A DNA stretch of 64,000 nucleotides from Euprymna scolopes (lineage: Eukaryota), in the NCBI GenBank assembly GCA_053919585.1, contig CM132825.1; one strand, given 5' to 3'. Under the pieces are notes generated by a model. It was not told the DNA's origin and made no database searches. It was given only the letters and a program-made list of their open reading frames with translations. The position numbers and the translations under genes were made by a program. Within the stretch, counting starts at the first letter, position 1; each line of letters starts with the position of its first letter. Shown one piece after another: positions 5,531 through 47,171 of the stretch.

Positions 5531-5563
5531 AATCCATTTAAGCAATGTATTAAATTATTAGCA

Positions 5564-16866: not shown

Positions 16867-17047
16867 ATAAAACTAATTAAAAATTACTTGTTTTAATTAG
16901 AAAGTTTTCTCATTACATTAAAGGTAGATAATTTATTTTGAAGGAAAAAAAATGTCCTTTTTAGCTTTTTTAAATGCCTAATAAGATCTCAAATTTTAAA
17001 TGATATCTCAAAAGTGCTAATATTATTTCATTAATCACATCATACAA

Positions 17048-17250
17048 GCTACTATGTCAGGTTTAATAGCTTCGTTTTCTAGGTGCATAGCTGTAGGAAT
17101 TGCATAGTCATAGTGGATGGTGTATGACTGATTTCCAACTGTTTTTGCCGATAAACATGTTCCCAGGATTTGCTGTTGCATTCGATATTCAACTTTTTAC
17201 AGATGGTCCAGTAAAGATATTTACACACTCCATTGTGTTGCATCGTATAA
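17048..17250 (-). mobile_element. RLE-type (R4/Dong-like) non-LTR retrotransposon remnant, downstream half
   Basis: Minus strand reads YYTMQHNGVCKYLYWTICKKLNIECNSKSWEH, then after a frameshift KTVGNQSYTIHYDYAIPTAMHLENEAIKPDIV. These are the RHN-like and PD motifs of the restriction-like endonuclease. Confidence 0.85.
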
Positions 17251-20200
17251 TAACCGTCCCACAGCAGAATCTTACATTTGTTTTGTGTCGCATCATATAA
17301 TAACCGTCCCACAGCAGAATCTTACATTTGTTTTGTGTCGCATCATATAATAACCGTCCCACAGCAGAATCTTACATTTGTTTTGTGTCGCATCGTATAA
17401 TAACCGTCCCACAGCAGAATCTTACATATGTTTTGTGTCGCATCGTATAATAACCGTCCCACAGCAGAACCTTACATATGTTTTGTGTCGCATCGTATAA
17501 TAACCGTCCCACAGCAGAACCTTACATATGTTTTGTGTCGCATCGTATAATAACCGTCCCACAGCAGAACCTTACATTTGTTTTGTGTCGCATCATATAA
17601 TAACCGTCCCACAGCAGAATCTTACATTTGTTTTGTGTCGCATCGTATAATAACCGTCCCACAGCAGAATCTTACATTTGTTTTGTGTCGCATCATATAA
17701 TAACCGTCCCACAGCAGAATCTTACATTTGTTTTGTGTCGCATCATATAATAACCGTCCCACAGCAGAATCTTACATTTGTTTTGTGTCGCATCATATAA
17801 TAACCGTCCCACAGCAGAATCTTACATTTGTTTTGTGTCGCATCATATAATAACCGTCCCACAGCAGAATCTTACATTTGTTTTGTGTCGCATCATATAA
17901 TAACCGTCCCACAGCAGAATCTTACATTTGTTTTGTGTCGCATCATATAATAACCGTCCCACAGCAGAATCTTACATTTGTTTTGTGTCGCATCATATAA
18001 TAACCGTCCCACAGCAGAATCTTACATTTGTTTTGTGTCGCATCATATAATAACCGTCCCACAGCAGAATCTTACATTTGTTTTGTGTCGCATCATATAA
18101 TAACCGTCCCACAGCAGAATCTTACATTTGTTTTGTGTCGCATCATATAATAACCGTCCCACAGCAGAATCTTACATTTGTTTTGTGTCGCATCGTATAA
18201 TAACCGTCCCACAGCAGAATCTTACATTTGTTTTGTGTCGCATCATATAATAACCGTCCCACAGCAGAATCTTACATTTGTTTTGTGTCGCATCGTATAA
18301 TAACCGTCCCACAGCAGAATCTTACATTTGTTTTGTGTCGCATCATATAATAACCGTCCCACAGCAGAACCTTACATATGTTTTGTGTCGCATCGTATAA
18401 TAACCGTCCCACAGCAGAACCTTACATATGTTTTGTGTCGCATCGTATAATAACCGTCCCACAGCAGAACCTTACATTTGTTTTGTGTCGGATCATATAA
18501 TAACCGTCCCACAGCAGAATCTTACATTTGTTTTGTGTCGCATCGTATAATAACCGTCCCACAGCAGAATCTTACATATGTTTTGTGTCGCATCGTATAA
18601 TAACCGTCCCACAGCAGAACCTTACATATGTTTTGTGTCGCATCGTATAATAACCGTCCCACAGCAGAACCTTACATATGTTTTGTGTCGCATCGTATAA
18701 TAACCGTCCCACAGCAGAACCTTACATTTGTTTTGTGTCGCATCATATAATAACCGTCCCACAGCAGAATCTTACATTTGTTTTGTGTCGCATCATATAA
18801 TAACCGTCCCACAGCAGAATCTTACATTTGTTTTGTGTCGCATCATATAATAACCGTCCCACAGCAGAATCTTACATTTGTTTTGTGTCGCATCATATAA
18901 TAACCGTCCCACAGCAGAATCTTACATTTGTTTTGTGTCGCATCATATAATAACCGTCCCACAGCAGAATCTTACATTTGTTTTGTGTCGCATCATATAA
19001 TAACCGTCCCACAGCAGAATCTTACATTTGTTTTGTGTCGCATCATATAATAACCGTCCCACAGCAGAATCTTACATTTGTTTTGTGTCGCATCATATAA
19101 TAACCGTCCCACAGCAGAATCTTACATTTGTTTTGTGTCGCATCATATAATAACCGTCCCACAGCAGAATCTTACATTTGTTTTGTGTCGCATCATATAA
19201 TAACCGTCCCACAGCAGAATCTTACATTTGTTTTGTGTCGCATCGTATAATAACCGTCCCACAGCAGAATCTTACATTTGTTTTGTGTCGCATCATATAA
19301 TAACCGTCCCACAGCAGAATCTTACATTTGTTTTGTGTCGCATCATATAATAACCGTCCCACAGCAGAATCTTACATTTGTTTTGTGTCGCATCATATAA
19401 TAACCGTCCCACAGCAGAATCTTACATTTGTTTTGTGTTGCATCATATAATAACCGTCCCACAGCAGAATCTTACATTTGTTTTGTGTCGCATCATATAA
19501 TAACCGTCCCACAGCAGAATCTTACATTTGTTTTGTGTCGCATCATATAATAACCGTCCCACAGCAGAATCTTACATTTGTTTTGTGTCGCATCATATAA
19601 TAACCGTCCCACAGCAGAATCTTACATTTGTTTTGTGTCGCATCATATAATAACCGTCCCACAGCAGAATCTTACATTTGTTTTGTGTCGCATCGTATAA
19701 TAACCGTCCCACAGCAGAATCTTACATTTGTTTTGTGTCGCATCATATAATAACCGTCCCACAGCAGAATCTTACATTTGTTTTGTGTCGCATCATATAA
19801 TAACCGTCCCACAGCAGAATCTTACATTTGTTTTGTGTCGCATCGTATAATAACCGTCCCACAGCAGAACCTTACATTTGTTTTGTGTCGGATCATATAA
19901 TAACCGTCCCACAGCAGAATCTTACATTTGTTTTGTGTCGCATCGTATAATAACCGTCCCACAGCAGAATCTTACATATGTTTTGTGTCGCATCGTATAA
20001 TAACCGTCCCACAGCAGAACCTTACATATGTTTTGTGTCGCATCGTATAATAACCGTCCCACAGCAGAACCTTACATATGTTTTGTGTCGCATCGTATAA
20101 TAACCGTCCCACAGCAGAACCTTACATTTGTTTTGTGTCGCATCATATAATAACCGTCCCACAGCAGAATCTTACATTTGTTTTGTGTCGCATCATATAA

Positions 20201-23200
20201 TAACCGTCCCACAGCAGAATCTTACATTTGTTTTGTGTCGCATCATATAATAACCGTCCCACAGCAGAATCTTACATTTGTTTTGTGTCGCATCATATAA
20301 TAACCGTCCCACAGCAGAATCTTACATTTGTTTTGTGTCGCATCATATAATAACCGTCCCACAGCAGAATCTTACATTTGTTTTGTGTCGCATCATATAA
20401 TAACCGTCCCACAGCAGAATCTTACATTTGTTTTGTGTCGCATCATATAATAACCGTCCCACAGCAGAATCTTACATTTGTTTTGTGTCGCATCATATAA
20501 TAACCGTCCCACAGCAGAACCTTACATTTGTTTTGTGTCGCATCGTATAATAACCGTCCCACAGCAGAACCTTACATTTGTTTTGTGTCGCATCGTATAA
20601 TAACCGTCCCACAGCAGAACCTTACATATGTTTTGTGTCGCATCGTATAATAACCGTCCCACAGCAGAACCTTACATATGTTTTGTGTCGCATCGTATAA
20701 TAACCGTCCCACAGCAGAACCTTACATTTGTTTTGTGTCGCATCATATAATAACCGTCCCACAGCAGAATCTTACATTTGTTTTGTGTCGCATCATATAA
20801 TAACCGTCCCACAGCAGAATCTTACATTTGTTTTGTGTCGCATCATATAATAACCGTCCCACAGCAGAATCTTACATTTGTTTTGTGTCGCATCATATAA
20901 TAACCGTCCCACAGCAGAATCTTACATTTGTTTTGTGTCGCATCATATAATAACCGTCCCACAGCAGAATCTTACATTTGTTTTGTGTCGCATCATATAA
21001 TAACCGTCCCACAGCAAAATCTTACATTTGTTTTGTGTCGCATCATATAATAACCGTCCCACAGCAGAATCTTACATTTGTTTTGTGTCGCATCGTATAA
21101 TAACCGTCCCACAGCAGAATCTTACATTTGTTTTGTGTCGCATCATATAATAACCGTCCCACAGCAGAATCTTACATTTGTTTTGTGTCGCATCATATAA
21201 TAACCGTCCCACAGCAGAATCTTACATTTGTTTTGTGTTGCATCGTATAATAATCGTCCCACAGCAGAATCTTACATTTGTTTTGTGTCGCATCATATAA
21301 TAACCGTCCCACAGCAGAATCTTACATTTGTTTTGTGTCGCATCATATAATAACCGTCCCACAGCAGAATCTTACATTTGTTTTGTGTCGCATCATATAA
21401 TAACCGTCCCACAGCAGAATCTTACATTTGTTTTGTGTCGCATCATATAATAACCGTCCCACAGCAGAATCTTACATTTGTTTTGTGTTGCATCGTATAA
21501 TAATCGTCCCACAGCAGAATCTTACATTTGTTTTGTGTCGCATCATATAATAACCGTCCCACAGCAGAATCTTACATTTGTTTTGTGTCGCATCATATAA
21601 TAACCGTCCCACAGCAGAATCTTACATTTGTTTTGTGTCGCATCATATAATAACCGTCCCACAGCAGAATCTTACATTTGTTTTGTGTCGCATCATATAA
21701 TAACCGTCCCACAGCAGAATCTTACATTTGTTTTGTGTCGCATCATATAATAACCGTCCCACAGCAGAATCTTACATTTGTTTTGTGTCGCATCATATAA
21801 TAACCGTCCCACAGCAGAATCTTACATTTGTTTTGTGTCGCATCATATAATAACCGTCCCACAGCAGAATCTTACATTTGTTTTGTGTTGCATCGTATAA
21901 TAATCGTCCCACAGCAGAATCTTACATTTGTTTTGTGTCGCATCATATAATAACCGTCCCACAGCAGAATCTTACATTTGTTTTGTGTCGCATCATATAA
22001 TAACCGTCCCACAGCAGAATCTTACATTTGTTTTGTGTCGCATCATATAATAACCGTCCCACAGCAGAATCTTACATTTGTTTTGTGTCGCATCATATAA
22101 TAACCGTCCCACAGCAGAATCTTACATTTGTTTTGTGTCGCATCATATAATAACCGTCCCACAGCAGAATCTTACATTTGTTTTGTGTCGCATCATATAA
22201 TAACCGTCCCACAGCAGAATCTTACATTTGTTTTGTGTCGCATCATATAATAACCGTCCCACAGCAGAATCTTACATTTGTTTTGTGTCGCATCATATAA
22301 TAACCGTCCCACAGCAGAATCTTACATTTGTTTTGTGTCGCATCGTATAATAACCGTCCCACAGCAGAACCTTGCATTTGTTTTGTGTCGCATCATATAA
22401 TAACCGTCCCACAGCAGAATCTTACATTTGTTTTGTGTCGCATCGTATAATAACCGTCCCACAGCAGAATCTTACATTTGTTTTGTGTCGCATCATATAA
22501 TAACCGTCCCACAGCAGAATCTTACATTTGTTTTGTGTCGCATCATATAATAACCGTCCCACAGCAGAATCTTACATTTGTTTTGTGTCGCATCGTATAA
22601 TAACCGTCCCACAGCAGAATCTTACATTTGTTTTGTGTCGCATCATATAATAACCGTCCCACAGCAGAATCTTACATTTGTTTTGTGTCGCATCATATAA
22701 TAACCGTCCCACAGCAGAATCTTACATTTGTTTTGTGTCGCATCATATAATAACCGTCCCACAGCAGAATCTTACATTTGTTTTATGTCGCATCATATAA
22801 TAACCGTCCCACAGCAGAATCTTACATTTGTTTTGTGTCGCATCATATAATAACCGTCCCACAGCAGAATCTTACATTTGTTTTGTGTCGCATCGTATAA
22901 TAACCGTCCCACAGCAGAATCTTACATTTGTTTTGTGTCGCATCATATAATAACCGTCCCACAGCAGAATCTTACATTTGTTTTGTGTCGCATCATATAA
23001 TAACCGTCCCACAGCAGAATCTTACATTTGTTTTGTGTCGCATCATATAATAACCGTCCCACAGCAGAATCTTACATTTGTTTTGTGTCGCATCATATAA
23101 TAACCGTCCCACAGCAGAATCTTACATTTGTTTTGTGTTGCATCGTATAATAATCGTCCCACAGCAGAATCTTACATTTGTTTTGTGTCGCATCATATAA

Positions 23201-26200
23201 TAACCGTCCCACAGCAGAATCTTACATTTGTTTTGTGTCGCATCATATAATAACCGTCCCACAGCAGAATCTTACATTTGTTTTGTGTCGCATCGTATAA
23301 TAACCGTCCCACAGCAGAATCTTACATTTGTTTTGTGTCGCATCATATAATAACCGTCCCACAGCAGAATCTTACATTTGTTTTGTGTTGCATCGTATAA
23401 TAATCGTTCCACAGCAGAATCTTACATTTGTTTTGTGTCGCATCATATAATAACCGTCCCACAGCAGAATCTTACATTTGTTTTGTGTCGCATCATATAA
23501 TAACCGTCCCACAGCAGAATCTTACATTTGTTTTGTGTCGCATCATATAATAACCGTCCCACAGCAGAATCTTACATTTGTTTTGTGTCGCATCATATAA
23601 TAACCGTCCCACAGCAGAATCTTACATTTGTTTTGTGTCGCATCGTATAATAACCGTCCCACAGCAGAATCTTACATTTGTTTTGTGTCGCATCATATAA
23701 TAACCGTCCCACAGCAGAATCTTACATTTGTTTTGTGTCGCATCATATAATAACCGTCCCACAGCAGAATCTTACATTTGTTTTGTGTCGCATCATATAA
23801 TAACCGTCCCACAGCAGAATCTTACATTTGTTTTGTGTCGCATCATATAATAACCGTCCCACAGCAGAATCTTACATTTGTTTTGTGTCGCATCATATAA
23901 TAACCGTCCCACAGCAGAATCTTACATTTGTTTTGTGTCGCATCATATAATAACCGTCCCACAGCAGAATCTTACATTTGTTTTGTGTCGCATCATATAA
24001 TAACCGTCCCACAGCAGAATCTTACATTTGTTTTGTGTCGCATCGTATAATAACCGTCCCACAGCAGAATCTTACATTTGTTTTGTGTCGCATCATATAA
24101 TAACCGTCCCACAGCAGAATCTTACATTTGTTTTGTGTCGCATCATATAATAACCGTCCCACAGCAGAATCTTACATTTGTTTTGTGTCGCATCATATAA
24201 TAACCGTCCCACAGCAGAATCTTACATTTGTTTTGTGTCGCATCATATAATAACCGTCCCACAGCAGAATCTTACATTTGTTTTGTGTCGCATCGTATAA
24301 TAACCGTCCCACAGCAGAATCTTACATTTGTTTTGTGTCGCATCGTATAATAACCGTCCCACAGCAGAATCTTACATTTGTTTTGTGTCGCATCATATAA
24401 TAACCGTCCCACAGCAGAATCTTACATTTGTTTTGTGTCGCATCATATAATAACCGTCCCACAGCAGAATCTTACATTTGTTTTGTGTCGCATCATATAA
24501 TAACCGTCCCACAGCAGAATCTTACATTTGTTTTGTGTTGCATCGTATAATAATCGTCCCACAGCAGAATCTTACATTTGTTTTGTGTCGCATCATATAA
24601 TAACCGTCCCACAGCAGAATCTTACATTTGTTTTGTGTCGCATCATATAATAACCGTCCCACAGCAGAATCTTACATTTGTTTTGTGTCGCATCATATAA
24701 TAACCGTCCCACAGCAGAATCTTACATTTGTTTTGTGTCGCATCATATAATAACCGTCCCACAGCAGAATCTTACATTTGTTTTGTGTCGCATCATATAA
24801 TAACCGTCCCACAGCAGAATCTTACATTTGTTTTGTGTCGCATCATATAATAACCGTCCCACAGCAGAATCTTACATTTGTTTTGTGTCGCATCATATAA
24901 TAACCGTCCCACAGCAGAATCTTACATTTGTTTTGTGTCGCATCATATAATAACCGTCCCACAGCAGAATCTTACATTTGTTTTGTGTCGCATCATATAA
25001 TAACCGTCCCACAGCAGAATCTTACATTTGTTTTGTGTCGCATCATATAATAACCGTCCCACAGCAGAATCTTACATTTGTTTTGTGTCGCATCATATAA
25101 TAACCGTCCCACAGCAGAATCTTACATTTGTTTTGTGTCGCATCGTATAATAACCGTCCCACAGCAGAATCTTACATTTGTTTTGTGTCGCATCGTATAA
25201 TAACCGTCCCACAGCAGAATCTTACATTTGTTTTGTGTCGCATCATATAATAACCGTCCCACAGCAGAATCTTACATTTGTTTTGTGTCGCATCATATAA
25301 TAACCGTCCCACAGCAGAATCTTACATTTGTTTTGTGTCGCATCATATAATAACCGTCCCACAGCAGAATCTTACATTTGTTTTGTGTCGCATCATATAA
25401 TAACCGTCCCACAGCAGAATCTTACATTTGTTTTGTGTCGCATCATATAATAACCGTCCCACAGCAGAATCTTACATTTGTTTTGTGTCGCATCATATAA
25501 TAACCGTCCCACAGCAGAATCTTACATTTGTTTTGTGTCGCATCATATAATAACCGTCCCACAGCAGAATCTTACATTTGTTTTGTGTCGCATCATATAA
25601 TAACCGTCCCACAGCAGAATCTTACATTTGTTTTGTGTCGCATCATATAATAACCGTCCCACAGCAGAATCTTACATTTGTTTTGTGTCGCATCATATAA
25701 TAACCGTCCCACAGCAGAATCTTACATTTGTTTTGTGTCGCATCATATAATAACCGTCCCACAGCAGAATCTTACATTTGTTTTGTGTCGCATCATATAA
25801 TAACCGTCCCACAGCAGAATCTTACATTTGTTTTGTGTCGCATCATATAATAACCGTCCCACAGCAGAATCTTACATTTGTTTTGTGTCGCATCATATAA
25901 TAACCGTCCCACAGCAGAATCTTACATTTGTTTTGTGTCGCATCATATAATAACCGTCCCACAGCAGAATCTTACATTTGTTTTGTGTCGCATCATATAA
26001 TAACCGTCCCACAGCAGAATCTTACATTTGTTTTGTGTCGCATCATATAATAACCGTCCCACAGCAGAATCTTACATTTGTTTTGTGTCGCATCATATAA
26101 TAACCGTCCCACAGCAGAATCTTACATTTGTTTTGTGTCGCATCGTATAATAACCGTCCCACAGCAGAATCTTACATTTGTTTTGTGTCGCATCATATAA

Positions 26201-29200
26201 TAACCGTCCCACAGCAGAATCTTACATTTGTTTTGTGTCGCATCATATAATAACCGTCCCACAGCAGAATCTTACATTTGTTTTGTGTCGCATCATATAA
26301 TAACCGTCCCACAGCAGAATCTTACATTTGTTTTGTGTCGCATCATATAATAACCGTCCCACAGCAGAATCTTACATTTGTTTTGTGTCGCATCATATAA
26401 TAACCGTCCCACAGCAGAATCTTACATTTGTTTTGTGTCGCATCATATAATAACCGTCCCACAGCAGAATCTTACATTTGTTTTGTGTCGCATCATATAA
26501 TAACCGTCCCACAGCAGAATCTTACATTTGTTTTGTGTCGCATCATATAATAACCGTCCCACAGCAGAATCTTACATTTGTTTTGTGTCGCATCATATAA
26601 TAACCGTCCCACAGCAGAATCTTACATTTGTTTTGTGTCGCATCATATAATAACCGTCCCACAGCAGAATCTTACATTTGTTTTGTGTCGCATCATATAA
26701 TAACCGTCCCACAGCAGAATCTTACATTTGTTTTGTGTCGCATCATATAATAACCGTCCCACAGCAGAATCTTACATTTGTTTTGTGTCGCATTGTATAA
26801 TAACCGTCCCACAGCAGAATCTTACATTTGTTTTGTGTCGCATCATATAATAACCGTCCCACAGCAGAATCTTACATTTGTTTTGTGTCGCATCATATAA
26901 TAACCGTCCCACAGCAGAATCTTACATTTGTTTTGTGTCGCATCATATAATAACCGTCCCACAGCAGAATCTTACATTTGTTTTGTGTAGCATCGTATAA
27001 TAATCGTCCCACAGCAGAATCTTACATTTGTTTTGTGTCGCATCATATAATAACCGTCCCACAGCAGAATCTTACATTTGTTTTGTGTCGCATCATATAA
27101 TAACCGTCCCACAGCAGAATCTTACATTTGTTTTGTGTCGCATCATATAATAACCGTCCCACAGCAGAATCTTACATTTGTTTTGTGTCGCATCATATAA
27201 TAACCGTCCCACAGCAGAATCTTACATTTGTTTTGTGTCGCATCATATAATAACCGTCCCACAGCAGAATCTTACATTTGTTTTGTGTCGCATCATATAA
27301 TAACCGTCCCACAGCAGAATCTTACATTTGTTTTGTGTCGCATCATATAATAACCGTCCCACAGCAGAATCTTACATTTGTTTTGTGTCGCATCATATAA
27401 TAACCGTCCCACAGCAGAATCTTACATTTGTTTTGTGTCGCATCGTATAATAACCGTCCCACAGCAGAATCTTACATTTGTTTTGTGTCGCATCATATAA
27501 TAACCGTCCCACAGCAGAATCTTACATTTGTTTTGTGTCGCATCATATAATAACCGTCCCACAGCAGAATCTTACATTTGTTTTGTGTCGCATCATATAA
27601 TAACCGTCCCACAGCAGAATCTTACATTTGTTTTGTGTCGCATCGTATAATAACCGTCCCACAGCAGAATCTTACATTTGTTTTGTGTCGCATCATATAA
27701 TAACCGTCCCACAGCAGAATCTTACATTTGTTTTGTGTCGCATCATATAATAACCGTCCCACAGCAGAATCTTACATTTGTTTTGTGTCGCATCATATAA
27801 TAACCGTCCCACAGCAGAATCTTACATTTGTTTTGTGTCGCATCGTATAATAACCGTCCCACAGCAGAATCTTACATTTGTTTTGTGTCGCATCATATAA
27901 TAACCGTCCCACAGCAGAATCTTACATTTGTTTTGTGTCGCATCATATAATAACCGTCCCACAGCAGAATCTTACATTTGTTTTGTGTCGCATCGTATAA
28001 TAACCGTCCCACAGCAGAATCTTACATTTGTTTTGTGTCGCATCATATAATAACCGTCCCACAGCAGAATCTTACATTTGTTTTGTGTCGCATCGTATAA
28101 TAACCGTCCTACAGTAGAATCTTACATTTGTTTTGTGTCGCATCATATAATAACCGTCCCACAGCAGAATCTTACATTTGTTTTGTGTCGCATCATATAA
28201 TAACCGTCCCACAGCAGAATCTTACATTTGTTTTGTGTCGCATCGTATAATAACCGTCCCACAGCAGAATCTTACATTTGTTTTGTGTCGCATCATATAA
28301 TAACCGTCCCACAGCAGAATCTTACATTTGTTTTGTGTCGCATCATATAATAACCGTCCCACAGCAGAATCTTACATTTGTTTTGTGTCGCATCATATAA
28401 TAACCGTCCCACAGCAGAATCTTACATTTGTTTTGTGTCGCATCGTATAATAACCGTCCCACAGCAGAATCTTACATTTGTTTTGTGTCGCATCATATAA
28501 TAACCGTCCCACAGCAGAATCTTACATTTGTTTTGTGTCGCATCGTATAATAACCGTCCCACAGCAGAATCTTACATTTGTTTTGTGTCGCATCATATAA
28601 TAACCGTCCCACAGCAGAATCTTACATTTGTTTTGTGTCGCATCATATAATAACCGTCCCACAGCAGAATCTTACATTTATTTTGTGTCGCATCGTATAA
28701 TAACCGTCCCACAGCAGAATCTTACATTTGTTTTGTGTCGCATCATATAATAACCGTCCCACAGCAGAATCTTACATTTGTTTTGTGTCGCATCGTATAA
28801 TAACCGTCCCACAGCAGAATCTTACATTTGTTTTGTGTCGCATCATATAATAACCGTCCCACAGCAGAATCTTACATTTGTTTTGTGTCGCATCATATAA
28901 TAACCGTCCCACAGCAGAATCTTACATTTGTTTTGTGTCGCATCGTATAATAACCGTCCCACAGCAGAATCTTACATTTGTTTTGTGTCGCATCGTATAA
29001 TAACCGTCCCACAGCAGAATCTTACATTTGTTTTGTGTCGCATCGTATAATAACCGTCCCACAGCAGAATCTTACATTTGTTTTGTGTCGCATCATATAA
29101 TAACCGTCCCACAGCAGAATCTTACATTTGTTTTGTGTCGCATCGTATAATAACCGTCCCACAGCAGAATCTTACATTTGTTTTGTGTCGCATCATATAA

Positions 29201-35200: not shown

Positions 35201-38200
35201 AACCGTCCCACAGCAGAATCTTACATTTGTTTTGTGTCGCATCATATAATAACCGTCCCACAGCAGAATCTTACATTTGTTTTGTGTCGCATCGTATAAT
35301 AACCGTCCCACAGCAGAATCTTACATTTGTTTTGTGTCGCATCATATAATAACCGTCCCACAGCAGAATCTTACATTTGTTTTGTGTCGCATCGTATAAT
35401 AACCGTCCCACAGCAGAATCTTACATTTGTTTTGTGTCGCATCATATAATAACCGTCCCACAGCAGAATCTTACATTTGTTTTGTGTCGCATCATATAAT
35501 AACCGTCCCACAGCAGAATCTTACATTTGTTTTGTGTCGCATCGTATAATAACCGTCCCACAGCAGAATCTTACATTTGTTTTGTGTCGCATCATATAAT
35601 AACCGTCCCACAGCAGAATCTTACATTTGTTTTGTGTCGCATCATATAATAACCGTCCCACAGCAGAATCTTACATTTGTTTTGTGTCGCATCATATAAT
35701 AACCGTCCCACAGCAGAATCTTACATTTGTTTTGTGTCGCATCGTATAATAACCGTCCCACAGCAGAATCTTACATTTGTTTTGTGTCGCATCATATAAT
35801 AACCGTCCCACAGCAGAATCTTACATTTGTTTTGTGTCGCATCATATAATAACCGTCCCACAGCAGAATCTTACATTTGTTTTGTGTCGCATCATATAAT
35901 AACCGTCCCACAGCAGAATCTTACATTTGTTTTGTGTTGCATCGTATAATAATCGTCCCACAGCAGAATCTTACATTTGTTTTGTGTCGCATCATATAAT
36001 AACCGTCCCACAGCAGAATCTTACATTTGTTTTGTGTCGCATCATATAATAACCGTCCCACAGCAGAATCTTACATTTGTTTTGTGTCGCATCGTATAAT
36101 AACCGTCCCACAGCAGAATCTTACATTTGTTTTGTGTCGCATCATATAATAACCGTCCCACAGCAGAATCTTACATTTGTTTTGTGTTGCATCGTATAAT
36201 AATCGTCCCACAGCAGAATCTTACATTTGTTTTGTGTCGCATCATATAATAACCGTCCCACAGCAGAATCTTACATTTGTTTTGTGTCGCATCATATAAT
36301 AACCGTCCCACAGCAGAATCTTACATTTGTTTTGTGTCGCATCATATAATAACCGTCCCACAGCAGAATCTTACATTTGTTTTGTGTCGCATCATATAAT
36401 AACCGTCCCACAGCAGAATCTTACATTTGTTTTGTGTCGCATCATATAATAACCGTCCCACAGCAGAATCTTACATTTGTTTTGTGTCGCATCATATAAT
36501 AACCGTCCCACAGCAGAATCTTACATTTGTTTTGTGTCGCATCATATAATAACCGTCCCACAGCAGAATCTTACATTTGTTTTGTGTCGCATCATATAAT
36601 AACCGTCCCACAGCAGAATCTTACATTTGTTTTGTGTCGCATCATATAATAACCGTCCCACAGCAGAATCTTACATTTGTTTTGTGTCGCATCATATAAT
36701 AACCGTCCCACAGCAGAATCTTACATTTGTTTTGTGTCGCATCGTATAATAACCGTCCCACAGCAGAATCTTACATTTGTTTTGTGTCGCATCATATAAT
36801 AACCGTCCCACAGCAGAATCTTACATTTGTTTTGTGTCGCATCATATAATAACCGTCCCACAGCAGAATCTTACATTTGTTTTGTGTCGCATCATATAAT
36901 AACCGTCCCACAGCAGAATCTTACATTTGTTTTGTGTTGCATCGTATAATAATCGTCCCACAGCAGAATCTTACATTTGTTTTGTGTCGCATCATATAAT
37001 AACCGTCCCACAGCAGAATCTTACATTTGTTTTGTGTCGCATCATATAATAACCGTCCCACAGCAGAATCTTACATTTGTTTTGTGTCGCATCATATAAT
37101 AACCGTCCCACAGCAGAATCTTACATTTGTTTTGTGTCGCATCATATAATAACCGTCCCACAGCAGAATCTTACATTTGTTTTGTGTCGCATCATATAAT
37201 AACCGTCCCACAGCAGAATCTTACATTTGTTTTGTGTCGCATCATATAATAACCGTCCCACAGCAGAATCTTACATTTGTTTTGTGTCGCATCATATAAT
37301 AACCGTCCCACAGCAGAATCTTACATTTGTTTTGTGTCGCATCATATAATAACCGTCCCACAGCAGAATCTTACATTTGTTTTGTGTCGCATCATATAAT
37401 AACCGTCCCACAGCAGAATCTTACATTTGTTTTGTGTCGCATCATATAATAACCGTCCCACAGCAGAATCTTACATTTGTTTTGTGTCGCATCATATAAT
37501 AACCGTCCCACAGCAGAATCTTACATTTGTTTTGTGTCGCATCATATAATAACCGTCCCACAGCAGAATCTTACATTTGTTTTGTGTCGCATCGTATAAT
37601 AACCGTCCCACAGCAGAATCTTACATTTGTTTTGTGTCGCATCATATAATAACCGTCCCACAGCAGAATCTTACATTTGTTTTGTGTCGCATCATATAAT
37701 AACCGTCCCACAGCAGAATCTTACATTTGTTTTGTGTCGCATCATATAATAACCGTCCCACAGCAGAATCTTACATTTGTTTTGTGTCGCATCATATAAT
37801 AACCGTCCCACAGCAGAATCTTACATTTGTTTTGTGTCGCATCATATAATAACCGTCCCACAGCAGAATCTTACATTTGTTTTGTGTCGCATCATATAAT
37901 AACCGTCCCACAGCAGAATCTTACATTTGTTTTGTGTCGCATCATATAATAACCGTCCCACAGCAGAATCTTACATTTGTTTTGTGTCGCATCATATAAT
38001 AACCGTCCCACAGCAGAATCTTACATTTGTTTTGTGTCGCATCATATAATAACCGTCCCACAGCAGAATCTTACATTTGTTTTGTGTCGCATCATATAAT
38101 AACCGTCCCACAGCAGAATCTTACATTTGTTTTGTGTCGCATCATATAATAACCGTCCCACAGCAGAATCTTACATTTGTTTTGTGTCGCATCATATAAT

Positions 38201-41200
38201 AACCGTCCCACAGCAGAATCTTACATTTGTTTTGTGTCGCATCATATAATAACCGTCCCACAGCAGAATCTTACATTTGTTTTGTGTCGCATCATATAAT
38301 AACCGTCCCACAGCAGAATCTTACATTTGTTTTGTGTCGCATCATATAATAACCGTCCCACAGCAGAATCTTACATTTGTTTTGTGTCGCATCATATAAT
38401 AACCGTCCCACAGCAGAATCTTACATTTGTTTTGTGTCGCATCATATAATAACCGTCCCACAGCAGAATCTTACATTTGTTTTGTGTCGCATCATATAAT
38501 AACCGTCCCACAGCAGAATCTTACATTTGTTTTGTGTCGCATCGTATAATAACCGTCCCACAGCAGAATCTTACATTTGTTTTGTGTCGCATCATATAAT
38601 AACCGTCCCACAGCAGAATCTTACATTTGTTTTGTGTCGCATCATATAATAACCGTCCCACAGCAGAATCTTACATTTGTTTTGTGTCGCATCATATAAT
38701 AACCGTCCCACAGCAGAATCTTACATTTGTTTTGTGTCGCATCATATAATAACCGTCCCACAGCAGAATCTTACATTTGTTTTGTGTCGCATCATATAAT
38801 AACCGTCCCACAGCAGAATCTTACATTTGTTTTGTGTCGCATCATATAATAACCGTCCCACAGCAGAATCTTACATTTGTTTTGTGTCGCATCATATAAT
38901 AACCGTCCCACAGCAGAATCTTACATTTGTTTTGTGTCGCATCATATAATAACCGTCCCACAGCAGAATCTTACATTTGTTTTGTGTCGCATCATATAAT
39001 AACCGTCCCACAGCAGAATCTTACATTTGTTTTGTGTCGCATCATATAATAACCGTCCCACAGCAGAATCTTACATTTGTTTTGTGTCGCATCATATAAT
39101 AACCGTCCCACAGCAGAATCTTACATTTGTTTTGTGTCGCATCATATAATAACCGTCCCACAGCAGAATCTTACATTTGTTTTGTGTCGCATCGTATAAT
39201 AACCGTCCCACAGCAGAATCTTACATTTGTTTTGTGTCGCATCATATAATAACCGTCCCACAGCAGAATCTTACATTTGTTTTGTGTCGCATCATATAAT
39301 AACCGTCCCACAGCAGAATCTTACATTTGTTTTGTGTCGCATCATATAATAACCGTCCCACAGTAGAATCTTACATTTGTTTTGTGTTGCATCGTATAAT
39401 AATCGTCCCACAGCAGAATCTTACATTTGTTTTGTGTCGCATCGTATAATAACCGTCCCACAGCAGAATCTTACATTTGTTTTGTGTCGCATCATATAAT
39501 AACCGTCCCACAGCAGAATCTTACATTTGTTTTGTGTCGCATCATATAATAACCGTCCCACAGCAGAATCTTACATTTGTTTTGTGTCGCATCATATAAT
39601 AACCGTCCCACAGCAGAATCTTACATTTGTTTTGTGTCGCATCATATAATAACCGTCCCACAGCAGAATCTTACATTTGTTTTGTGTCGCATCATATAAT
39701 AACCGTCCCACAGCAGAATCTTACATTTGTTTTGTGTCGCATCATATAATAACCGTCCCACAGCAGAATCTTACATTTGTTTTGTGTCGCATCATATAAT
39801 AACCGTCCCACAGCAGAATCTTACATTTGTTTTGTGTCGCATCGTATAATAACCGTCCCACAGCAGAATCTTACATTTGTTTTGTGTCGCATCATATAAT
39901 AACCGTCCCACAGCAGAATCTTACATTTGTTTTGTGTCGCATCATATAATAACCGTCCCACAGCAGAATCTTACATTTGTTTTGTGTCGCATCATATAAT
40001 AACCGTCCCACAGCAGAATCTTACATTTGTTTTGTGTCGCATCGTATAATAACCGTCCCACAGCAGAATCTTACATTTGTTTTGTGTCGCATCATATAAT
40101 AACCGTCCCACAGCAGAATCTTACATTTGTTTTGTGTCGCATCATATAATAACCGTCCCACAGCAGAATCTTACATTTGTTTTGTGTCGCATCATATAAT
40201 AACCGTCCCACAGCAGAATCTTACATTTGTTTTGTGTCGCATCGTATAATAACCGTCCCACAGCAGAATCTTACATTTGTTTTGTGTCGCATCATATAAT
40301 AACCGTCCCACAGCAGAATCTTACATTTGTTTTGTGTCGCATCGTATAATAACCGTCCCACAGCAGAATCTTACATTTGTTTTGTGTCGCATCATATAAT
40401 AACCGTCCCACAGCAGAATCTTACATTTGTTTTGTGTCGCATCATATAATAACCGTCCCACAGCAGAATCTTACATTTGTTTTGTGTCGCATCATATAAT
40501 AACCGTCCCACAGCAGAATCTTACATTTGTTTTGTGTTGCATCGTATAATAACCGTCCCACAGCAGAATCTTACATTTGTTTTGTGTCGCATCATATAAT
40601 AACCGTCCCACAGCAGAATCTTACATTTGTTTTGTGTCGCATCATATAATAACCGTCCCACAGCAGAATCTTACATTTGTTTTGTGTTGCATCGTATAAT
40701 AATCGTCCCACAGCAGAATCTTACATTTGTTTTGTGTCGCATCATATAATAACCGTCCCACAGCAGAATCTTACATTTGTTTTGTGTCGCATCATATAAT
40801 AACCGTCCCACAGCAGAATCTTACATTTGTTTTGTGTCGCATCATATAATAACCGTCCCACAGCAGAATCTTACATTTGTTTTGTGTCGCATCATATAAT
40901 AACCGTCCCACAGCAGAATCTTACATTTGTTTTGTGTCGCATCATATAATAACCGTCCCACAGCAGAATCTTACATTTGTTTTGTGTCGCATCATATAAT
41001 AACCGTCCCACAGCAGAATCTTACATTTGTTTTGTGTCGCATCATATAATAACCGTCCCACAGCAGAATCTTACATTTGTTTTGTGTCGCATCATATAAT
41101 AACCGTCCCACAGCAGAATCTTACATTTGTTTTGTGTCGCATCGTATAATAACCGTCCCACAGCAGAATCTTACATTTGTTTTGTGTCGCATCATATAAT

Positions 41201-44200
41201 AACCGTCCCACAGCAGAATCTTACATTTGTTTTGTGTCGCATCATATAATAACCGTCCCACAGCAGAATCTTACATTTGTTTTGTGTCGCATCATATAAT
41301 AACCGTCCCACAGCAGAATCTTACATTTGTTTTGTGTCGCATCGTATAATAACCGTCCCACAGCAGAATCTTACATTTGTTTTGTGTCGCATCATATACT
41401 AACCGTCCCACAGCAGAATCTTACATTTGTTTTGTGTCGCATCATATAATAACCGTCCCACAGCAGAATCTTACATTTGTTTTGTGTCGCATCATATAAT
41501 AACCGTCCCACAGCAGAATCTTACATTTGTTTTGTGTCGCATCATATAATAACCGTCCCACAGCAGAATCTTACATTTGTTTTGTGTCGCATCGTATAAT
41601 AACCGTCCCACAGCAGAATCTTACATTTGTTTTGTGTCGCATCGTATAATAACCGTCCCACAGCAGAATCTTACATTTGTTTTGTGTCGCATCATATAAT
41701 AACCGTCCCACAGCAGAATCTTACATTTGTTTTGTGTCGCATCATATAATAACCGTCCCACAGCAGAATCTTACATTTGTTTTGTGTCGCATCATATAAT
41801 AACCGTCCCACAGCAGAATCTTACATTTGTTTTGTGTCGCATCATATAATAACCGTCCCACAGCAGAATCTTACATTTGTTTTGTGTCGCATCGTATAAT
41901 AACCGTCCCACAGCAGAATCTTACATTTGTTTTGTGTCGCATCATATAATAACCGTCCCACAGCAGAATCTTACATTTGTTTTGTGTCGCATCATATAAT
42001 AACCGTCCCACAGCAGAATCTTACATTTGTTTTGTGTCGCATCATATAATAACCGTCCCACAGCAGAATCTTACATTTGTTTTGTGTCGCATCATATAAT
42101 AACCGTCCCACAGCAGAATCTTACATTTGTTTTGTGTCGCATCGTATAATAACCGTCCCACAGCAGAATCTTACATTTGTTTTGTGTCGCATCGTATAAT
42201 AACCGTCCCACAGCAGAATCTTACATTTGTTTTGTGTCGCATCATATAATAACCGTCCCACAGCAGAATCTTACATTTGTTTTGTGTCGCATCATATAAT
42301 AACCGTCCCACAGCAGAATCTTACATTTGTTTTGTGTCGCATCATATAATAACCGTCCCACAGCAGAATCTTACATTTGTTTTGTGTCGCATCATATAAT
42401 AACCGTCCCACAGCAGAATCTTACATTTGTTTTGTGTCGCATCATATAATAACCGTCCCACAGCAGAATCTTACATTTGTTTTGTGTCGCATCATATAAT
42501 AACCGTCCCACAGCAGAATCTTACATTTGTTTTGTGTCGCATCGTATAATAACCGTCCCACAGCAGAATCTTACATTTGTTTTGTGTCGCATCATATAAT
42601 AACCGTCCCACAGCAGAATCTTACATTTGTTTTGTGTCGCATCATATAATAACCGTCCCACAGCAGAATCTTACATTTGTTTTGTGTCGCATCATATAAT
42701 AACCGTCCCACAGCAGAATCTTACATTTGTTTTGTGTCGCATCATATAATAACCGTCCCACAGCAGAATCTTACATTTGTTTTGTGTCGCATCATATAAT
42801 AACCGTCCCACAGCAGAATCTTACATTTGTTTTGTGTCGCATCGTATAATAACCGTCCCACAGCAGAATCTTACATTTGTTTTGTGTCGCATCATATAAT
42901 AACCGTCCCACAGCAGAATCTTACATTTGTTTTGTGTCGCATCATATAATAACCGTCCCACAGCAGAATCTTACATTTGTTTTGTGTCGCATCGTATAAT
43001 AACCGTCCCACAGCAGAATCTTACATTTGTTTTGTGTCGCATCATATAATAACCGTCCCACAGCAGAATCTTACATTTGTTTTGTGTCGCATCATATAAT
43101 AACCGTCCCACAGCAGAATCTTACATTTGTTTTGTGTCGCATCATATAATAACCGTCCCACAGCAGAATCTTACATTTGTTTTGTGTCGCATCGTATAAT
43201 AACCGTCCCACAGCAGAATCTTACATTTGTTTTGTGTTGCATCGTATAATAATCGTCCCACAGCAGAATCTTACATTTGTTTTGTGTCGCATCATATAAT
43301 AACCGTCCCACAGCAGAATCTTACATTTGTTTTGTGTCGCATCATATAATAACCGTCCCACAGCAGAATCTTACATTTGTTTTGTGTCGCATCGTATAAT
43401 AACCGTCCCACAGCAGAATCTTACATTTGTTTTGTGTCGCATCATATAATAACCGTCCCACAGCAGAATCTTACATTTGTTTTGTGTCGCATCATATAAT
43501 AACCGTCCCACAGCAGAATCTTACATTTGTTTTGTGTCGCATCATATAATAACCGTCCCACAGCAGAATCTTACATTTGTTTTGTGTCGCATCGTATAAT
43601 AACCGTCCCACAGCAGAATCTTACATTTGTTTTGTGTCGCATCGTATAATAATCGTCCCACAGCAGAATCTTACATTTGTTTTGTGTCGCATCGTATAAT
43701 AACCGTCCCACAGCAGAATCTTACATTTGTTTTGTGTCGCATCATATAATAACCGTCCCACAGCAGAATCTTACATTTGTTTTGTGTCGCATCGTATAAT
43801 AACCGTCCCACAGCAGAATCTTACATTTGTTTTGTGTCGCATCATATAATAACCGTCCCACAGCAGAATCTTACATTTGTTTTGTGTCGCATCGTATAAT
43901 AACCGTCCCACAGCAGAATCTTACATTTGTTTTGTGTTGCATCGTATAATAACCGTCCCACAGCAGAATCTTACATTTGTTTTGTGTCGCATCATATAAT
44001 AACCGTCCCACAGCAGAATCTTACATTTGTTTTGTGTCGCATCATATAATAACCGTCCCACAGCAGAATCTTACATTTGTTTTGTGTCGCATCATATAAT
44101 AACCGTCCCACAGCAGAATCTTACATTTGTTTTGTGTTGCATCGTATAATAATCGTCCCACAGCAGAATCTTACATTTGTTTTGTGTCGCATCATATAAT

Positions 44201-46873
44201 AACCGTCCCACAGCAGAATCTTACATTTGTTTTGTGTCGCATCATATAATAACCGTCCCACAGCAGAATCTTACATTTGTTTTGTGTCGCATCATATAAT
44301 AACCGTCCCACAGCAGAATCTTACATTTGTTTTGTGTCGCATCATATAATAACCGTCCCACAGCAGAATCTTACATTTGTTTTGTGTCGCATCATATAAT
44401 AACCGTCCCACAGCAGAATCTTACATTTGTTTTGTGTCGCATCATATAATAACCGTCCCACAGCAGAATCTTACATTTGTTTTGTGTCGCATCATATAAT
44501 AACCGTCCCACAGCAGAATCTTACATTTGTTTTGTGTCGCATCATATAATAACCGTCCCACAGCAGAATCTTACATTTGTTTTGTGTCGCATCGTATAAT
44601 AACCGTCCCACAGCAGAATCTTACATTTGTTTTGTGTCGCATCATATAATAACCGTCCCACAGCAGAACCTTACATTTGTTTTGTGTCGCATCATATAAT
44701 AACCGTCCCACAGCAGAACCTTGCATTTGTTTTGTGTCGCATCGTATAATAACCGTCCCACAGCAGAATCTTACATCTGTTTTGTGTCGCATCATATAAT
44801 AACCGTCCCACAGCAGAACCTTACATTTGTTTTGTGTCGCATCATATAATAACCGTCCCACAGCAGAATCTTACATCTGTTTTGTGTCGCATCATATAAT
44901 AACCGTCCCACAGCAGAATCTTACATTTGTTTTGTGTCGCATCATATAATAACCGTCCCACAGCAGAACCTTGCATTTGTTTTGTGTCGCATCGTATAAT
45001 AACCGTCCCACAGCAGAATCTTACATCTGTTTTGTGTCGCATCATATAATAACCGTCCCACAGCAGAATCTTACATTTGTTTTGTGTCGCATCATATAAT
45101 AACCGTCCCACAGCAGAATCTTACATCTGTTTTGTGTCGCATCATATAATAACCGTCCCACAGCAGAATCTTACATTTGTTTTGTGTCGCATCATATAAT
45201 AACCGTCCCACAGCAGAATCTTACATTTGTTTTGTGTCGCATCATATAATAACCGTCCCACAGCAGAATCTTACATCTGTTTTGTGTCGCATCATATAAT
45301 AACCGTCCCACAGCAGAATCTTACATTTGTTTTGTGTCGCATCATATAATAACCGTCCCACAGCAGAATCTTACATTTGTTTTGTGTCGCATCATATAAT
45401 AACCGTCCCACAGCAGAATCTTACATTTGTTTTGTGTCGCATCATATAATAACCGTCCCACAGCAGAATCTTACATTTGTTTTGTGTCGCATCATATAAT
45501 AACCGTCCCACAGCAGAACCTTGCATTTGTTTTGTGTCGCATCATATAATAACCGTCCCACAGCAGAATCTTACATTTGTTTTGTGTCGCATCATATAAT
45601 AACCGTCCCACAGCAGAATCTTACATTTGTTTTGTGTCGCATCATATAATAACCGTCCCACAGCAGAATCTTACATCTGTTTTGTGTCGCATCATATAAT
45701 AACCGTCCCACAGCAGAATCTTACATTTGTTTTGTGTCGCATCATATAATAACCGTCCCACAGCAGAATCTTACATTTGTTTTGTGTCGCATCATATAAT
45801 AACCGTCCCACAGCAGAATCTTACATTTGTTTTGTGTCGCATCATATAATAACCGTCCCACAGCAGAATCTTACATCTGTTTTGTGTCGCATCATATAAT
45901 AACCGTCCCACAGCAGAATCTTACATTTGTTTTGTGTCGCATCATATAATAACCGTCCCACAGCAGAATCTTACATCTGTTTTGTGTCGCATCATATAAT
46001 AACCGTCCCACAGCAGAATCTTACATTTGTTTTGTGTCGCATCATATAATAACCGTCCCACAGCAGAACCTTACATATGTTTTGTGTCGCATCATATAAT
46101 AACCGTCCCACAGCAGAATCTTACATTTGTTTTGTGTCGCATCATATAATAACCGTCCCACAGCAGAATCTTACATCTGTTTTGTGTCGCATCATATAAT
46201 AACCGTCCCACAGCAGAATCTTACATTTGTTTTGTGTCGCATCATATAATAACCGTCCCACAGCAGAATCTTACATCTGTTTTGTGTCGCATCATATAAT
46301 AACCGTCCCACAGCAGAATCTTACATTTGTTTTGTGTCGCATCATATAATAACCGTCCCACAGCAGAATCTTACATCTGTTTTGTGTCGCATCATATAAT
46401 AACCGTCCCACAGCAGAACCTTACATTTGTTTTGTGTCGCATCATATAATAACCGTCCCACAGCAGAATCTTACATCTGTTTTGTGTCGCATCATATAAT
46501 AACCGTCCCACAGCAGAATCTTACATTTGTTTTGTGTCGCATCATATAATAACCGTCCCACAGCAGAACCTTGCATTTGTTTTGTGTCGCATCGTATAAT
46601 AACCGTCCCACAGCAGAATCTTACATCTGTTTTGTGTCGCATCATATAATAACCGTCCCACAGCAGAATCTTACATTTGTTTTGTGTCGCATCATATAAT
46701 AACCGTCCCACAGCAGAACCTTGCATTTGTTTTGTGTCGCATCGTATAATAACCGTCCCACAGCAGAATCTTACATCTGTTTTGTGTCGCATCATATAAT
46801 AACCGTCCCACAGCAGAATCTTACATTTGTTTTGTGTCGCATCATATAATAACCGTCCCACAGCAGAACCTTA
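17233..46873. repeat. 50-bp tandem satellite, about 593 copies (29.6 kb)
   Basis: Consensus catcatataataaccgtcccacagcagaatcttacatttgttttgtgtcg repeated head to tail. Only a few recurrent substitutions and one 1-bp register shift near 30666. Confidence 0.99.
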
Positions 46874-47150
46874 GTACTAGATGTCAGGTGGATCACACTC
46901 TCTACTTCTGTGTGGCAAAACCTACACTTTTTGTCATTGCTGAGACCACTCATCTTCTAAAAAGCATTGGTTATCAAACCTTGATCTTGGCCAACCATTT
47001 TAATTCTCTGCCGATCATAATGGAACGGTCCTCTTTTTAACCAGTCTATAGAGCCTTCCATGTCTATATAATCCTAGGTGAATTCATCCAGAAAATACTT
47101 GCCACAATGTTTGTGGGCCCATTCTTCCAATATTTTGTAATATTTCATAA
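46862..47150 (-). mobile_element. RLE-type (R4/Dong-like) retrotransposon remnant, upstream half
   Basis: Minus strand reads EEWAHKHCGKYF..*DYIDMEGSIDWLKRG...GQDQGLITNAF*KMSGLSNDKKCRFCHTEVESVIHLTSSTKVLL: the W..HG, WL..G, QDQ and CxxC..E..H knuckle motifs, with 2 stops. Confidence 0.85.
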
Positions 47151-47171
47151 AAGCGATTATGTTTAGTCAAA

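What the first reader, a model, noticed from the sequence alone, without database searches (positions are those of the whole stretch)
17048..47150. A 29.6-kb satellite born inside the zinc knuckle of a dead RLE retrotransposon, in a HERC2 intron
Seen: removing the array rejoins one minus-strand reading frame, ..QDQGLIT..CRFCHTEVESVIHLTSSTKVLL-WDGYYTMQHNGVCKYLYWTIC..WEH..KPDIV. The 50-bp unit itself encodes the CKILLWDGYY(M/T)MRH piece. Established: CCHC knuckle, RHN/D motif and PD-(D/E)xK nuclease in this order define RLE-clade LINEs such as R4/Dong. Inference: the satellite arose in situ from TE coding sequence and amplified about 593-fold with its birthplace intact, expanding a roughly 2.5-kb intron to 32.2 kb in a highly conserved gene. 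Such a cleanly preserved origin is rarely visible.
Basis: partly seen in the sequence, partly recalled or inferred. Interest (0 to 1): 0.82.

Follow-up and report, generated by a model that had tools for sequence, protein, structure and literature searches.

The report
Giant intronic repeat born inside dead LINE
A 29.6-kb run of 593 copies of a 50-bp unit grew in place from a short coding piece of one broken retrotransposon inside an intron of the HERC2 gene of a large (probably mollusc) genome. It is a very clean example of an already known way that tandem-repeat DNA arises.

Summary

- **The array.** Window 17233-46873 holds 592.8 head-to-tail copies of a 50-bp unit. 71% of the units are identical.
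- **The flanks.** They are the two halves of one 5'- and 3'-truncated, stop-ridden minus-strand copy of an abundant LINE. Intact relatives encode RT plus a C-terminal CCHC-RHN-KPD-E-K nuclease of the R2 type and have no APE domain.
- **In-place origin.** The two halves overlap by 44 nt on an intact relative. Sister copies carry that segment once, and 48 of the 50 unit bases are collinear with the element.
- **Single locus.** The unit-to-unit junction 30-mer occurs 592 times in the 5.9-Gb assembly, and all 592 are here.
- **Copy number.** Short-read contigs of a DNA run collapse the array to an 80-nt cycle at 353x single-copy depth. That is 75% of the assembly's expectation, so hundreds of copies are real.
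- **Gene context.** The array lies antisense in a 32.1-kb HERC2 intron between the CPH and ZZ exons. Without the array the intron would be 2.5 kb.

Caveats:
- The window copy keeps only the KPD motif of the nuclease.
- The R4/Dong assignment could not be tested.
- The array is a single-locus giant minisatellite rather than a dispersed satellite.
- This scan already found another in-place TE-born array in the same genome.

Known kind, new member.

The parts
17233..46873 (.). Tandem array of 593 units of 50 bp (29,641 bp). The modal unit is at window 17283-17332. Units 4-70 and 549-591 carry edge-specific variants and the centre is nearly uniform.
   Evidence: TRF; unit census and variant map; junction 30-mer genome count of 592, all in this array
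46874..47141 (-). Upstream (5') half of the dead LINE fragment. It matches aa ~1084-1170 of intact relatives, ends in CRFCHTEVESVIHLTSS (the CCH of the CCHC knuckle), has two in-frame stops and is 5'-truncated.
   Evidence: Genome hits at query positions 4-268, 81-88% identity, about 7000 candidates; blastn and tblastn to L053; translation
17051..17232 (-). Downstream (3') half of the same LINE fragment. It reads (Q)HNGVCKYLYWTICKKLNIECNSKSWEH, then a frameshift, then ..IHYDYAIPTAMHLENEAIKPDIV. It is cut off right after the KPD motif, and the rest of the nuclease and the 3' UTR are absent from the window.
   Evidence: Genome hits at query positions 352-533, 88-92% identity. Sister copies continue with VEVSVP..EKITKY..IIPVIIGATG past this point. 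No further fragment of the family lies in the window.
16296..16469 (+). HERC2 exon immediately upstream of the array-bearing intron (after the end of the CPH/Cul7 domain). Donor GT at 16470.
   Evidence: tblastn of the HERC2-architecture protein P0063, aa 2536-2592; an RNA-seq contig ends exactly at 16469 with 63 nt continuing elsewhere; splice-site letters. The exon start is inferred from the AG.
16470..48607 (+). HERC2 intron of 32,138 bp that holds the LINE fragment and the array. It would be 2,497 bp without the array.
48608..48737 (+). HERC2 exon immediately downstream (before the ZZ-finger exon at 51469-51606).
   Evidence: tblastn of P0063, aa 2587-2628; AG at 48606-48607 and GTAAGT at 48738. 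Boundaries are inferred and have no RNA confirmation.

Best explanation
An old insertion of an RLE-type (R2-superfamily, APE-less) LINE lies antisense in a HERC2 intron and decayed there. Inside this one copy, a roughly 50-bp piece was duplicated in tandem. The piece runs from the last Cys codon of the CCHC knuckle to the His of the RHN motif: 48 nt of element sequence plus 2 nt (TT) of unclear origin. The duplicate then grew to about 590 copies by repeated unequal exchange or replication slippage within the array.

Most of the growth amplified a derived variant (CpG to CpA at unit position 13) in the centre. Older variants were left stranded at both edges. The result is a single-locus, non-coding giant minisatellite that lengthens the intron 13-fold.

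Shown: the collinearity, the single-copy state in sister copies, the uniqueness of the locus, the high copy number in independent reads, and the gene context. Inferred: the founding duplication mechanism, growth by unequal exchange, and the absence of function.
For: - **Array and frames.**
- **Flanks are halves of one element.** Both flanks hit thousands of copies of one repeat family.
- **Single copy elsewhere.** Ten sister copies read through left flank, one 42-48-nt segment and right flank without duplication.
- **Subfamily match.** The copy L055, 2.9 Mb away, matches the unit at 46 of 48 nt, including CTTACATTTG. So 48 of 50 unit bases are subfamily sequence.
- **Overlap on an intact relative.** The flanks map to L053 positions 3407-3716 and 3673-3897, a 44-nt overlap.
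- **Unique locus.** The junction 30-mer occurs 592 times forward and 0 reverse in 5.9 Gb, all within the window.
- **Edge variants.** Variants E, F, K and M occur only in units 4-70. Variants D, G and I occur only in units 549-591. The family-majority C at unit position 38 survives mainly at both edges.
- **Block duplication.** A perfect 61-unit block is repeated 64 units away, as unequal exchange would produce.
- **Read depth.** A DNA run gives an 80-nt collapsed cycle contig at depth 4976 against 14.1 for the adjacent single-copy contig. That is 353x, against 469x expected from the assembly.
- **Other samples.** Array words occur in runs from 9 studies.
- **Element type.** Relatives of 1347 and 1387 aa have RVT_1, no APE hit, and R2 proteins as best PDB matches. 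Their C-terminus aligns to the R2Tg RLE through CCHC, RHN, KPD, E/D and K..KY.
Against: - Two unit bases (TT, positions 49-50) are supplied by neither flank.
- The 7 nt just right of the array differ at 5 positions from sister copies, so the founding junctions are not a simple clean duplication.
- No read spans the array. Its exact length rests on the assembly plus a k-mer depth ratio that is 25% lower than expected.
- The perfect 3-kb internal block repeat could be an assembler duplication.
- The best DNA run may come from the same individual as the assembly (warning).
- No orthologous intron from another species could be examined.
Confidence: 0.88

Rival explanations
1. Assembly artefact: a short tandem duplication (a few to tens of units) was inflated to 29.6 kb by the assembler.
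For: The array is 98% uniform, 71% of the units are identical, and it contains a perfect 61-unit repeated block. No spanning read could be examined. The k-mer depth is 25% below expectation.
Against: A DNA run's collapsed 80-nt array contig has 353 times the depth of the neighbouring single-copy contig. A second large run (X8) shows depth 1344 against about 5-12 for individual TE copies. The ordered, edge-specific variant pattern is what real arrays show, not random collapse or expansion.
Confidence: 0.05
2. The tandem repeat is a feature of the LINE family or of a subfamily master copy. It would then have been inherited on insertion and only expanded here, rather than born at this locus.
For: TE-internal tandem repeats are common sources of satellites (PMC7004042, PMC9659126). 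L055 shares the unit's subfamily-specific bases.
Against: All sister copies examined, L055 included, carry the segment once. Intact relatives have it once within an open frame. The junction 30-mer with up to 3 mismatches is found nowhere else in 5.9 Gb.
Confidence: 0.04
3. The array is a selected functional element of the HERC2 locus, such as a regulatory, splicing-factor or small-RNA source, and not a neutral by-product.
For: Array words appear in oligo-dT and polyA RNA-seq runs. Read on the pre-mRNA strand, each unit has a branch-point-like UAAUAAC followed by CCCACAG (read directly from the sequence; the functional meaning is an inference).
Against: In RNA run X21 the array depth per copy is about 1.1 against 28.9 for the adjacent exon, which is the level expected of unspliced intron or carried-over DNA. 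The unit shows no sequence constraint beyond homogenisation and has no match to a known RNA or protein function. The exon contig ends at the donor, as in normal splicing.
Confidence: 0.03

Closest known systems
Satellite DNAs derived from LINE ORF2 sequence (PROsat of Phodopus roborovskii, Pvc20 of Phoca vitulina, chicken HinfI/CR1 satellite), as tabulated in PMC9659126
   Same: The tandem-repeat monomer is derived from the coding part of a non-LTR retrotransposon.
   Different: Those are multi-locus or heterochromatic satellites recognised by similarity, and their birthplace is lost. Here there is one euchromatic intronic locus, a 50-bp unit, an RLE-type element, and both halves of the parent copy still flank the array.
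Retrotransposon-derived tandem repeats giving rise to satellites in Lathyrus (Vondrak et al. 2020, PMC7004042)
   Same: Short tandem repeats arising inside a retroelement and amplified into long arrays.
   Different: There the repeats sit in LTR-element (Ogre) non-coding regions and are carried by many element copies before amplification. Here the duplication is private to one decayed LINE copy and lies in coding sequence.
98-kb, 221-bp-unit array born from a Gypsy integrase tail in the same genome (scan finding s1-279866, not re-tested here)
   Same: Same genome, and the same route: in-place amplification of a coding segment of a single dead retrotransposon, with the parent flanks attached.
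   Different: Different element class (LTR/Gypsy against RLE LINE), unit length (221 against 50 bp), array size and locus.
R2 retrotransposon proteins with solved structures (9dou R2Tg, 9nl2/9nl3, 8gh6 R2Bm)
   Same: Relatives of the parent element share the RT, at E 1e-25 to 1e-15. They also share the C-terminal CCHC-RHN-KPD-(D/E)-K nuclease in the same order, and they lack an APE domain.
   Different: No N-terminal C2H2 zinc finger is visible. The family has about 16 extra residues before KPD. Its insertions are not site-specific: 3' flanks are diverse and the tail is short and A-rich. R2 targets 28S rDNA (established knowledge).

Membership tests
RLE-bearing non-LTR retrotransposons (R2 superfamily: R2, R4/Dong, NeSL, Hero, CRE) | Reverse transcriptase domain in a single long ORF | tested here: met
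   Intact relatives L053 (1347 aa) and L054 (1387 aa) match RVT_1 at E 3e-28 and 3e-27. Their best PDB matches are R2 proteins at E 9e-25. The window copy itself lacks this part because it is 5'-truncated.
RLE-bearing non-LTR retrotransposons (R2 superfamily: R2, R4/Dong, NeSL, Hero, CRE) | No N-terminal apurinic/apyrimidinic (APE, Exo_endo_phos) endonuclease | tested here: met
   No Exo_endo_phos hit at E<=0.1 in either full-length relative.
RLE-bearing non-LTR retrotransposons (R2 superfamily: R2, R4/Dong, NeSL, Hero, CRE) | C-terminal CCHC knuckle, then RHN/D, then a PD-(D/E)xK nuclease (KPD .. D/E .. K), in that order | tested here: met
   The L053 C-terminus reads CX2CX8HX4C, RHN, KPDIV, VEVSVP and EKITKY. 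It aligns motif for motif with the R2Tg and R2 RLE, at E 0.001. That E-value is marginal, but the alignment is collinear over 176 residues.
   The window copy stops at 17051, right after KPDIV. The E and K motifs present in sister copies are missing, and no further fragment lies in the window.
R4/Dong clade specifically | RT phylogeny grouping with R4, Dong or Rex6 references (Repbase/Dfam) | not testable with these tools
The literature reports the 'Dong-R4' class as abundant in coleoid cephalopods (PMC8967140), which is only circumstantial. The family is not site-specific, unlike R4 (rDNA) and Dong (TAA repeats) as I know them.
TE-derived tandem repeat (satellite or minisatellite born from a transposable element) | Monomer homologous and collinear to an internal TE segment that is single-copy in the TE family | tested here: met
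   48 of the 50 unit bases are collinear with the element, and sister copies carry the segment once.
TE-derived tandem repeat (satellite or minisatellite born from a transposable element) | Array flanked by the two contiguous halves of the parent copy (in-place origin) | tested here: met
   The flanks map to adjacent positions of L053 with a 44-nt overlap.
Satellite DNA in the classical sense | Many loci or heterochromatic blocks, typically 100 kb or more | tested here: not met
   One locus only in 5.9 Gb. It is 29.6 kb, has a 50-bp unit, and lies in a euchromatic intron of an expressed gene. It is better called a giant minisatellite or VNTR.
HERC2 (host gene) | Collinear exons matching a protein with three RCC1-like domains, Cyt-b5, MIB_HERC2, CPH/Cul7, ZZ and HECT domains | tested here: met
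   P0063 (4692 aa) has that architecture. Ten window exons on the + strand match its aa 2468-2964 in order, at 49-70% identity.

The most novel reading that the evidence does not exclude
In-place amplification of coding fragments of single dead retrotransposons may be a recurrent, ongoing process in this very large mollusc genome; two clean cases have now been seen by this scan. On that reading, this intronic array is a young, length-polymorphic VNTR. One sample shows 75% of the assembly's copy number. Its alleles could alter transcription or splicing of a 4,700-residue essential gene, and such arrays would contribute measurably to intron and genome expansion.
Probability: 0.15. Interest if true: 0.55.

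Novelty: new member of a known kind. Interest (0 to 1): 0.35.

Why it matters
This is an unusually legible record of how a long tandem array starts. The parent element, both breakpoints, the amplified 48 nt, the stranded older variants at the edges and a 3-kb internal block duplication are all readable at one locus. That makes it a good teaching or model case for testing how arrays are founded and grow: founding duplication, then unequal exchange, then central homogenisation. It is also a possible VNTR marker in HERC2. It does not reveal a new mechanism or function, because TE coding regions, LINE ORF2 included, are already documented sources of satellite DNA.

Tried and rejected
- **Pfam on the window-family C-terminal fragments.** It gave only sub-threshold zf-RVT (21 bits) and VRR_NUC (12.7 bits) hits. 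Classification therefore had to go through full-length relatives and R2 structures.
- **The search for homologous proteins on the nuclease region.** It returned 33 unnamed metagenomic or ENA proteins, so it gave no information on the clade.
- **Search for the missing 3' part of the element elsewhere in the window.** This tested whether another TE had split the element. Nothing was found. The neighbouring repeat at 16590-16883 is an unrelated CR1-like tail, separated from the fragment by unique sequence.
- **Microhomology between the duplication breakpoints.** The CATT and TTG motifs would give 44- or 45-nt units, not 50 nt. I rejected this as an explanation.
- **Simple higher-order periodicity in the variant string.** None was found for lags 1-39.
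- **Site-specific insertion as a test of R4/Dong.** The 3' flanks of about 30 copies are diverse.
- **Organism F (run X25).** Whether it has the array in tandem could not be settled. Its contigs cover the units at low depth, but single TE copies can align there too.
- **Run X8.** It is labelled 'RNA?' but behaves like low-coverage DNA: 1.4 Gb of contigs and no exon coverage. I did not use it as expression evidence.
Full report
**1. Observation**

Tandem Repeats Finder reports a single array at window 17233-46873: period 50, 592.8 copies, 98% matches, 0% indels.

Cutting at the unit-to-unit junction motif gives 593 units. Of these, 591 are 50 nt, one is 49 nt and the terminal one is 42 nt. There are only 30 sequence variants. 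419 units are identical, and 92 differ only by G instead of A at unit position 13, which is a CpG site.

- The right flank ends ..CRFCHTEVESVIHLTSSTKVLLWDGYY.
- The left flank starts LLWDGYYTMQHNGVCKYLYWTICKKLNIECNSKSWEH and, after a frameshift, reads ..IHYDYAIPTAMHLENEAIKPDIV.
- The unit encodes CKILLWDGYYMMRH.

The frame is dead. It has two in-frame stops in the right flank and a frameshift in the left flank.

**2. The flanks are two halves of one retrotransposon copy**

Each flank hits thousands of places in the 5.9-Gb assembly (about 7000 first-look candidates each). The matches cover window 17051-17232 at 88-92% identity and 46877-47141 at 81-88%.

Ten sister copies aligned across the junction read left flank, then one copy of the 42-48-nt segment, then right flank, with no duplication.

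A copy 2.9 Mb away on the same contig (L055) matches the array unit at 46 of 48 positions, including the CTTACATTTG stretch that the family majority spells differently. So 48 of the 50 unit bases are collinear subfamily sequence. Only the last two (TT) are unexplained.

Against an intact relative, the right flank plus last unit maps to element positions 3407-3716, and the first unit plus left flank maps to 3673-3897. The 44-nt overlap is the amplified segment. At protein level the ranges are aa 1084-1206 and 1171-1245.

The window copy is therefore a roughly 490-bp internal fragment, 5'-truncated as LINE copies usually are. It is also cut off at 17051, immediately after KPDIV. Sister copies continue with ..ATLVEVSVPNDAGLNRAEREKITKYQGLMYDMKRNWNLRKISIIPVIIGATG... 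No further piece of the family lies in the window.

**3. What the element is**

Protein search of the genome found many open copies, with frames up to 1355-1390 aa and 24,446 first-look candidates.

Two of them, L053 (1347 aa) and L054 (1387 aa), have these features:
- A central RVT_1 domain (E 3e-28 and 3e-27), with no APE/Exo_endo_phos hit and a weak zf-RVT hit over the CCHC.
- R2 retrotransposon proteins as best matches among solved structures (9nl3, 9dou, 9nl2, 8gh6), at E 9e-25 to 2e-15.
- A C-terminal 268 aa that aligns to the R2Tg and R2 restriction-like endonuclease through CX2CX8HX4C, RHN, KPD(I/L)V, V(E/D)V(S/T)V and EK(I/V)xKY. The E-value of 0.001 is marginal, but the alignment is collinear over 176 residues.

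This meets the definition of RLE-type LINEs that I know from Yang, Malik and Eickbush 1999.

The clade could not be tested. The N-terminus shows no C2H2 finger. The 3' ends carry a short A-rich tail in diverse flanks, so the family is not site-specific. The RepeatMasker class 'Dong-R4' is reported as abundant in coleoid cephalopods (PMC8967140), which is circumstantial only.

The amplified segment runs from the codon of the fourth knuckle ligand (Cys) to the His of RHN. The unit still encodes that Cys and the Arg of RHN, as sister copies do. The decayed edge copies now read Thr and Gln there.

**4. One locus only, and really long**

The 30-mer spanning the unit-to-unit junction, allowing 3 mismatches, occurs 592 times forward and 0 times reverse in the whole assembly. 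The window alone contains 592. The tandem form therefore exists nowhere else in 5.9 Gb.

Public runs are available only as Logan contigs. In DNA run X1 (organism A), the array collapses to an 80-nt contig, which is 50 + k-1 and so a closed cycle. That contig has no mismatches and a depth of 4976. The adjacent single-copy contig over the exon (16305-16607) has a depth of 14.1.

The ratio is 353. The assembly predicts a mean of 469 for those 50 words. X1 thus supports about 75% of the assembled copy number. That means hundreds of copies, and possibly shorter alleles in that sample.

Array words are held by runs from 9 studies, nearly all of organism A.

**5. Internal anatomy and growth**

Variants E, F, K and M occur only in units 4-70. 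Variants D, G and I occur only in units 549-591. The centre is almost pure modal unit, interspersed with the G13 variant.

The C at unit position 38, which is the family-majority state, survives almost only at the two edges. The modal unit carries the CpG-decayed A13.

A perfect block of 61 units (3.05 kb) recurs 64 units further on.

This is the classical signature of growth by unequal exchange or slippage, with homogenisation in the centre and older variants stranded at the margins. That reading is an inference.

The founding event is not fully readable:
- TT at unit positions 49-50 is fixed in all junctions, but neither flank supplies it.
- The 7 nt just right of the array differ at 5 positions from sister copies. 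Together with the preceding base they form an 8-bp palindrome that is unique in the window.

**6. Gene context**

A 4692-aa protein with the full HERC2 architecture has three RCC1-like domains, Cyt-b5, MIB_HERC2, Cul7/CPH, ZZ and HECT domains. It matches ten + strand exons of the window in order, at aa 2468-2964.

The array-bearing intron lies between the exon ending at 16469 (GTTAGT donor) and the exon starting at 48608 (after CAG). That makes 32,138 bp, or 2,497 bp without the array.

An oligo-dT RNA-seq contig ends exactly at 16469 with 63 further nt lying elsewhere, as a spliced transcript would.

In that run, array depth per copy is about 1.1 against 28.9 for the exon. This is intron-level signal, not an independent transcript.

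The LINE is antisense to the gene.

**7. Comparison and verdict**

Tandem repeats derived from transposable elements, including LINE ORF2 segments, are documented: PROsat, Pvc20 and chicken HinfI/CR1 in review PMC9659126, and retrotransposon-derived arrays in PMC7004042. Another agent of this scan reports a 98-kb array born from a Gypsy integrase tail in this same genome (s1-279866; not re-tested here).

This is therefore a new, exceptionally clean member of a known kind. It is a single-locus giant minisatellite rather than a classical satellite, and I found no evidence of function.

Both the observation and the interpretation stand, with four corrections:
- The nuclease is incomplete in the window copy.
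- The R4/Dong assignment is untested.
- The word 'satellite' is used loosely.

Noticed in passing
G000 loci L044-L052, L053 (ORF 1498-5538, minus), L054 (ORF 1258-5418, minus): The RLE-type LINE family has a young subfamily. Many copies are 98-100% identical over the last 225 nt, with open frames up to 1355-1390 aa. A striking share of the best hits lies on contig C46. The family looks recently or currently active.
   Followed up: partly
window 16590-16883 (minus strand): A fragment of another, extremely abundant repeat with a CR1-like C-terminal tail (..SFFP..W..LP....FK..VN..). Summed contig depth at 16706-16781 reaches about 200,000 in run X1. It is unrelated to the RLE element.
   Followed up: no
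window 4630-5514: An 0.9-kb CT-rich tandem array with nested periods of 19, 26 and 51, in an upstream HERC2 intron. It produces strong GC and AT skew.
   Followed up: no
window 12083-12345: A 20-bp x 13 minisatellite (96% matches) about 160 bp downstream of the HERC2 exon at 11771-11923.
   Followed up: no
window 59126-60270: A tandem duplication with a 585-bp period. Identical 103-aa, 72-aa, 76-aa and 69-aa open frames recur at an offset of 585. This is beyond TRF's period limit.
   Followed up: no
window 1502-2369 (minus strand): A mariner-type transposase remnant with long open frames (..DETWGHHYDPETK..VMLTIFWD..YSPDLS..DFHLF).
   Followed up: no
window 20-1379 and 8945-9523 (+ strand): Reverse-transcriptase and C-terminal fragments of a CR1/jockey-like LINE (..YGFRS..STADLL....YADD..). 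Two related copies lie in upstream introns.
   Followed up: no
window 52148-52384: Another first-stage note on this window reports a palindrome with a hammerhead ribozyme on each strand (s1-288593). I did not examine it.
   Followed up: no
window 46871-46880: A cluster of 5 substitutions in 7 nt, forming an 8-bp perfect palindrome with the preceding base, exactly at the right array boundary. It may be a repair scar of the founding duplication.
   Followed up: partly
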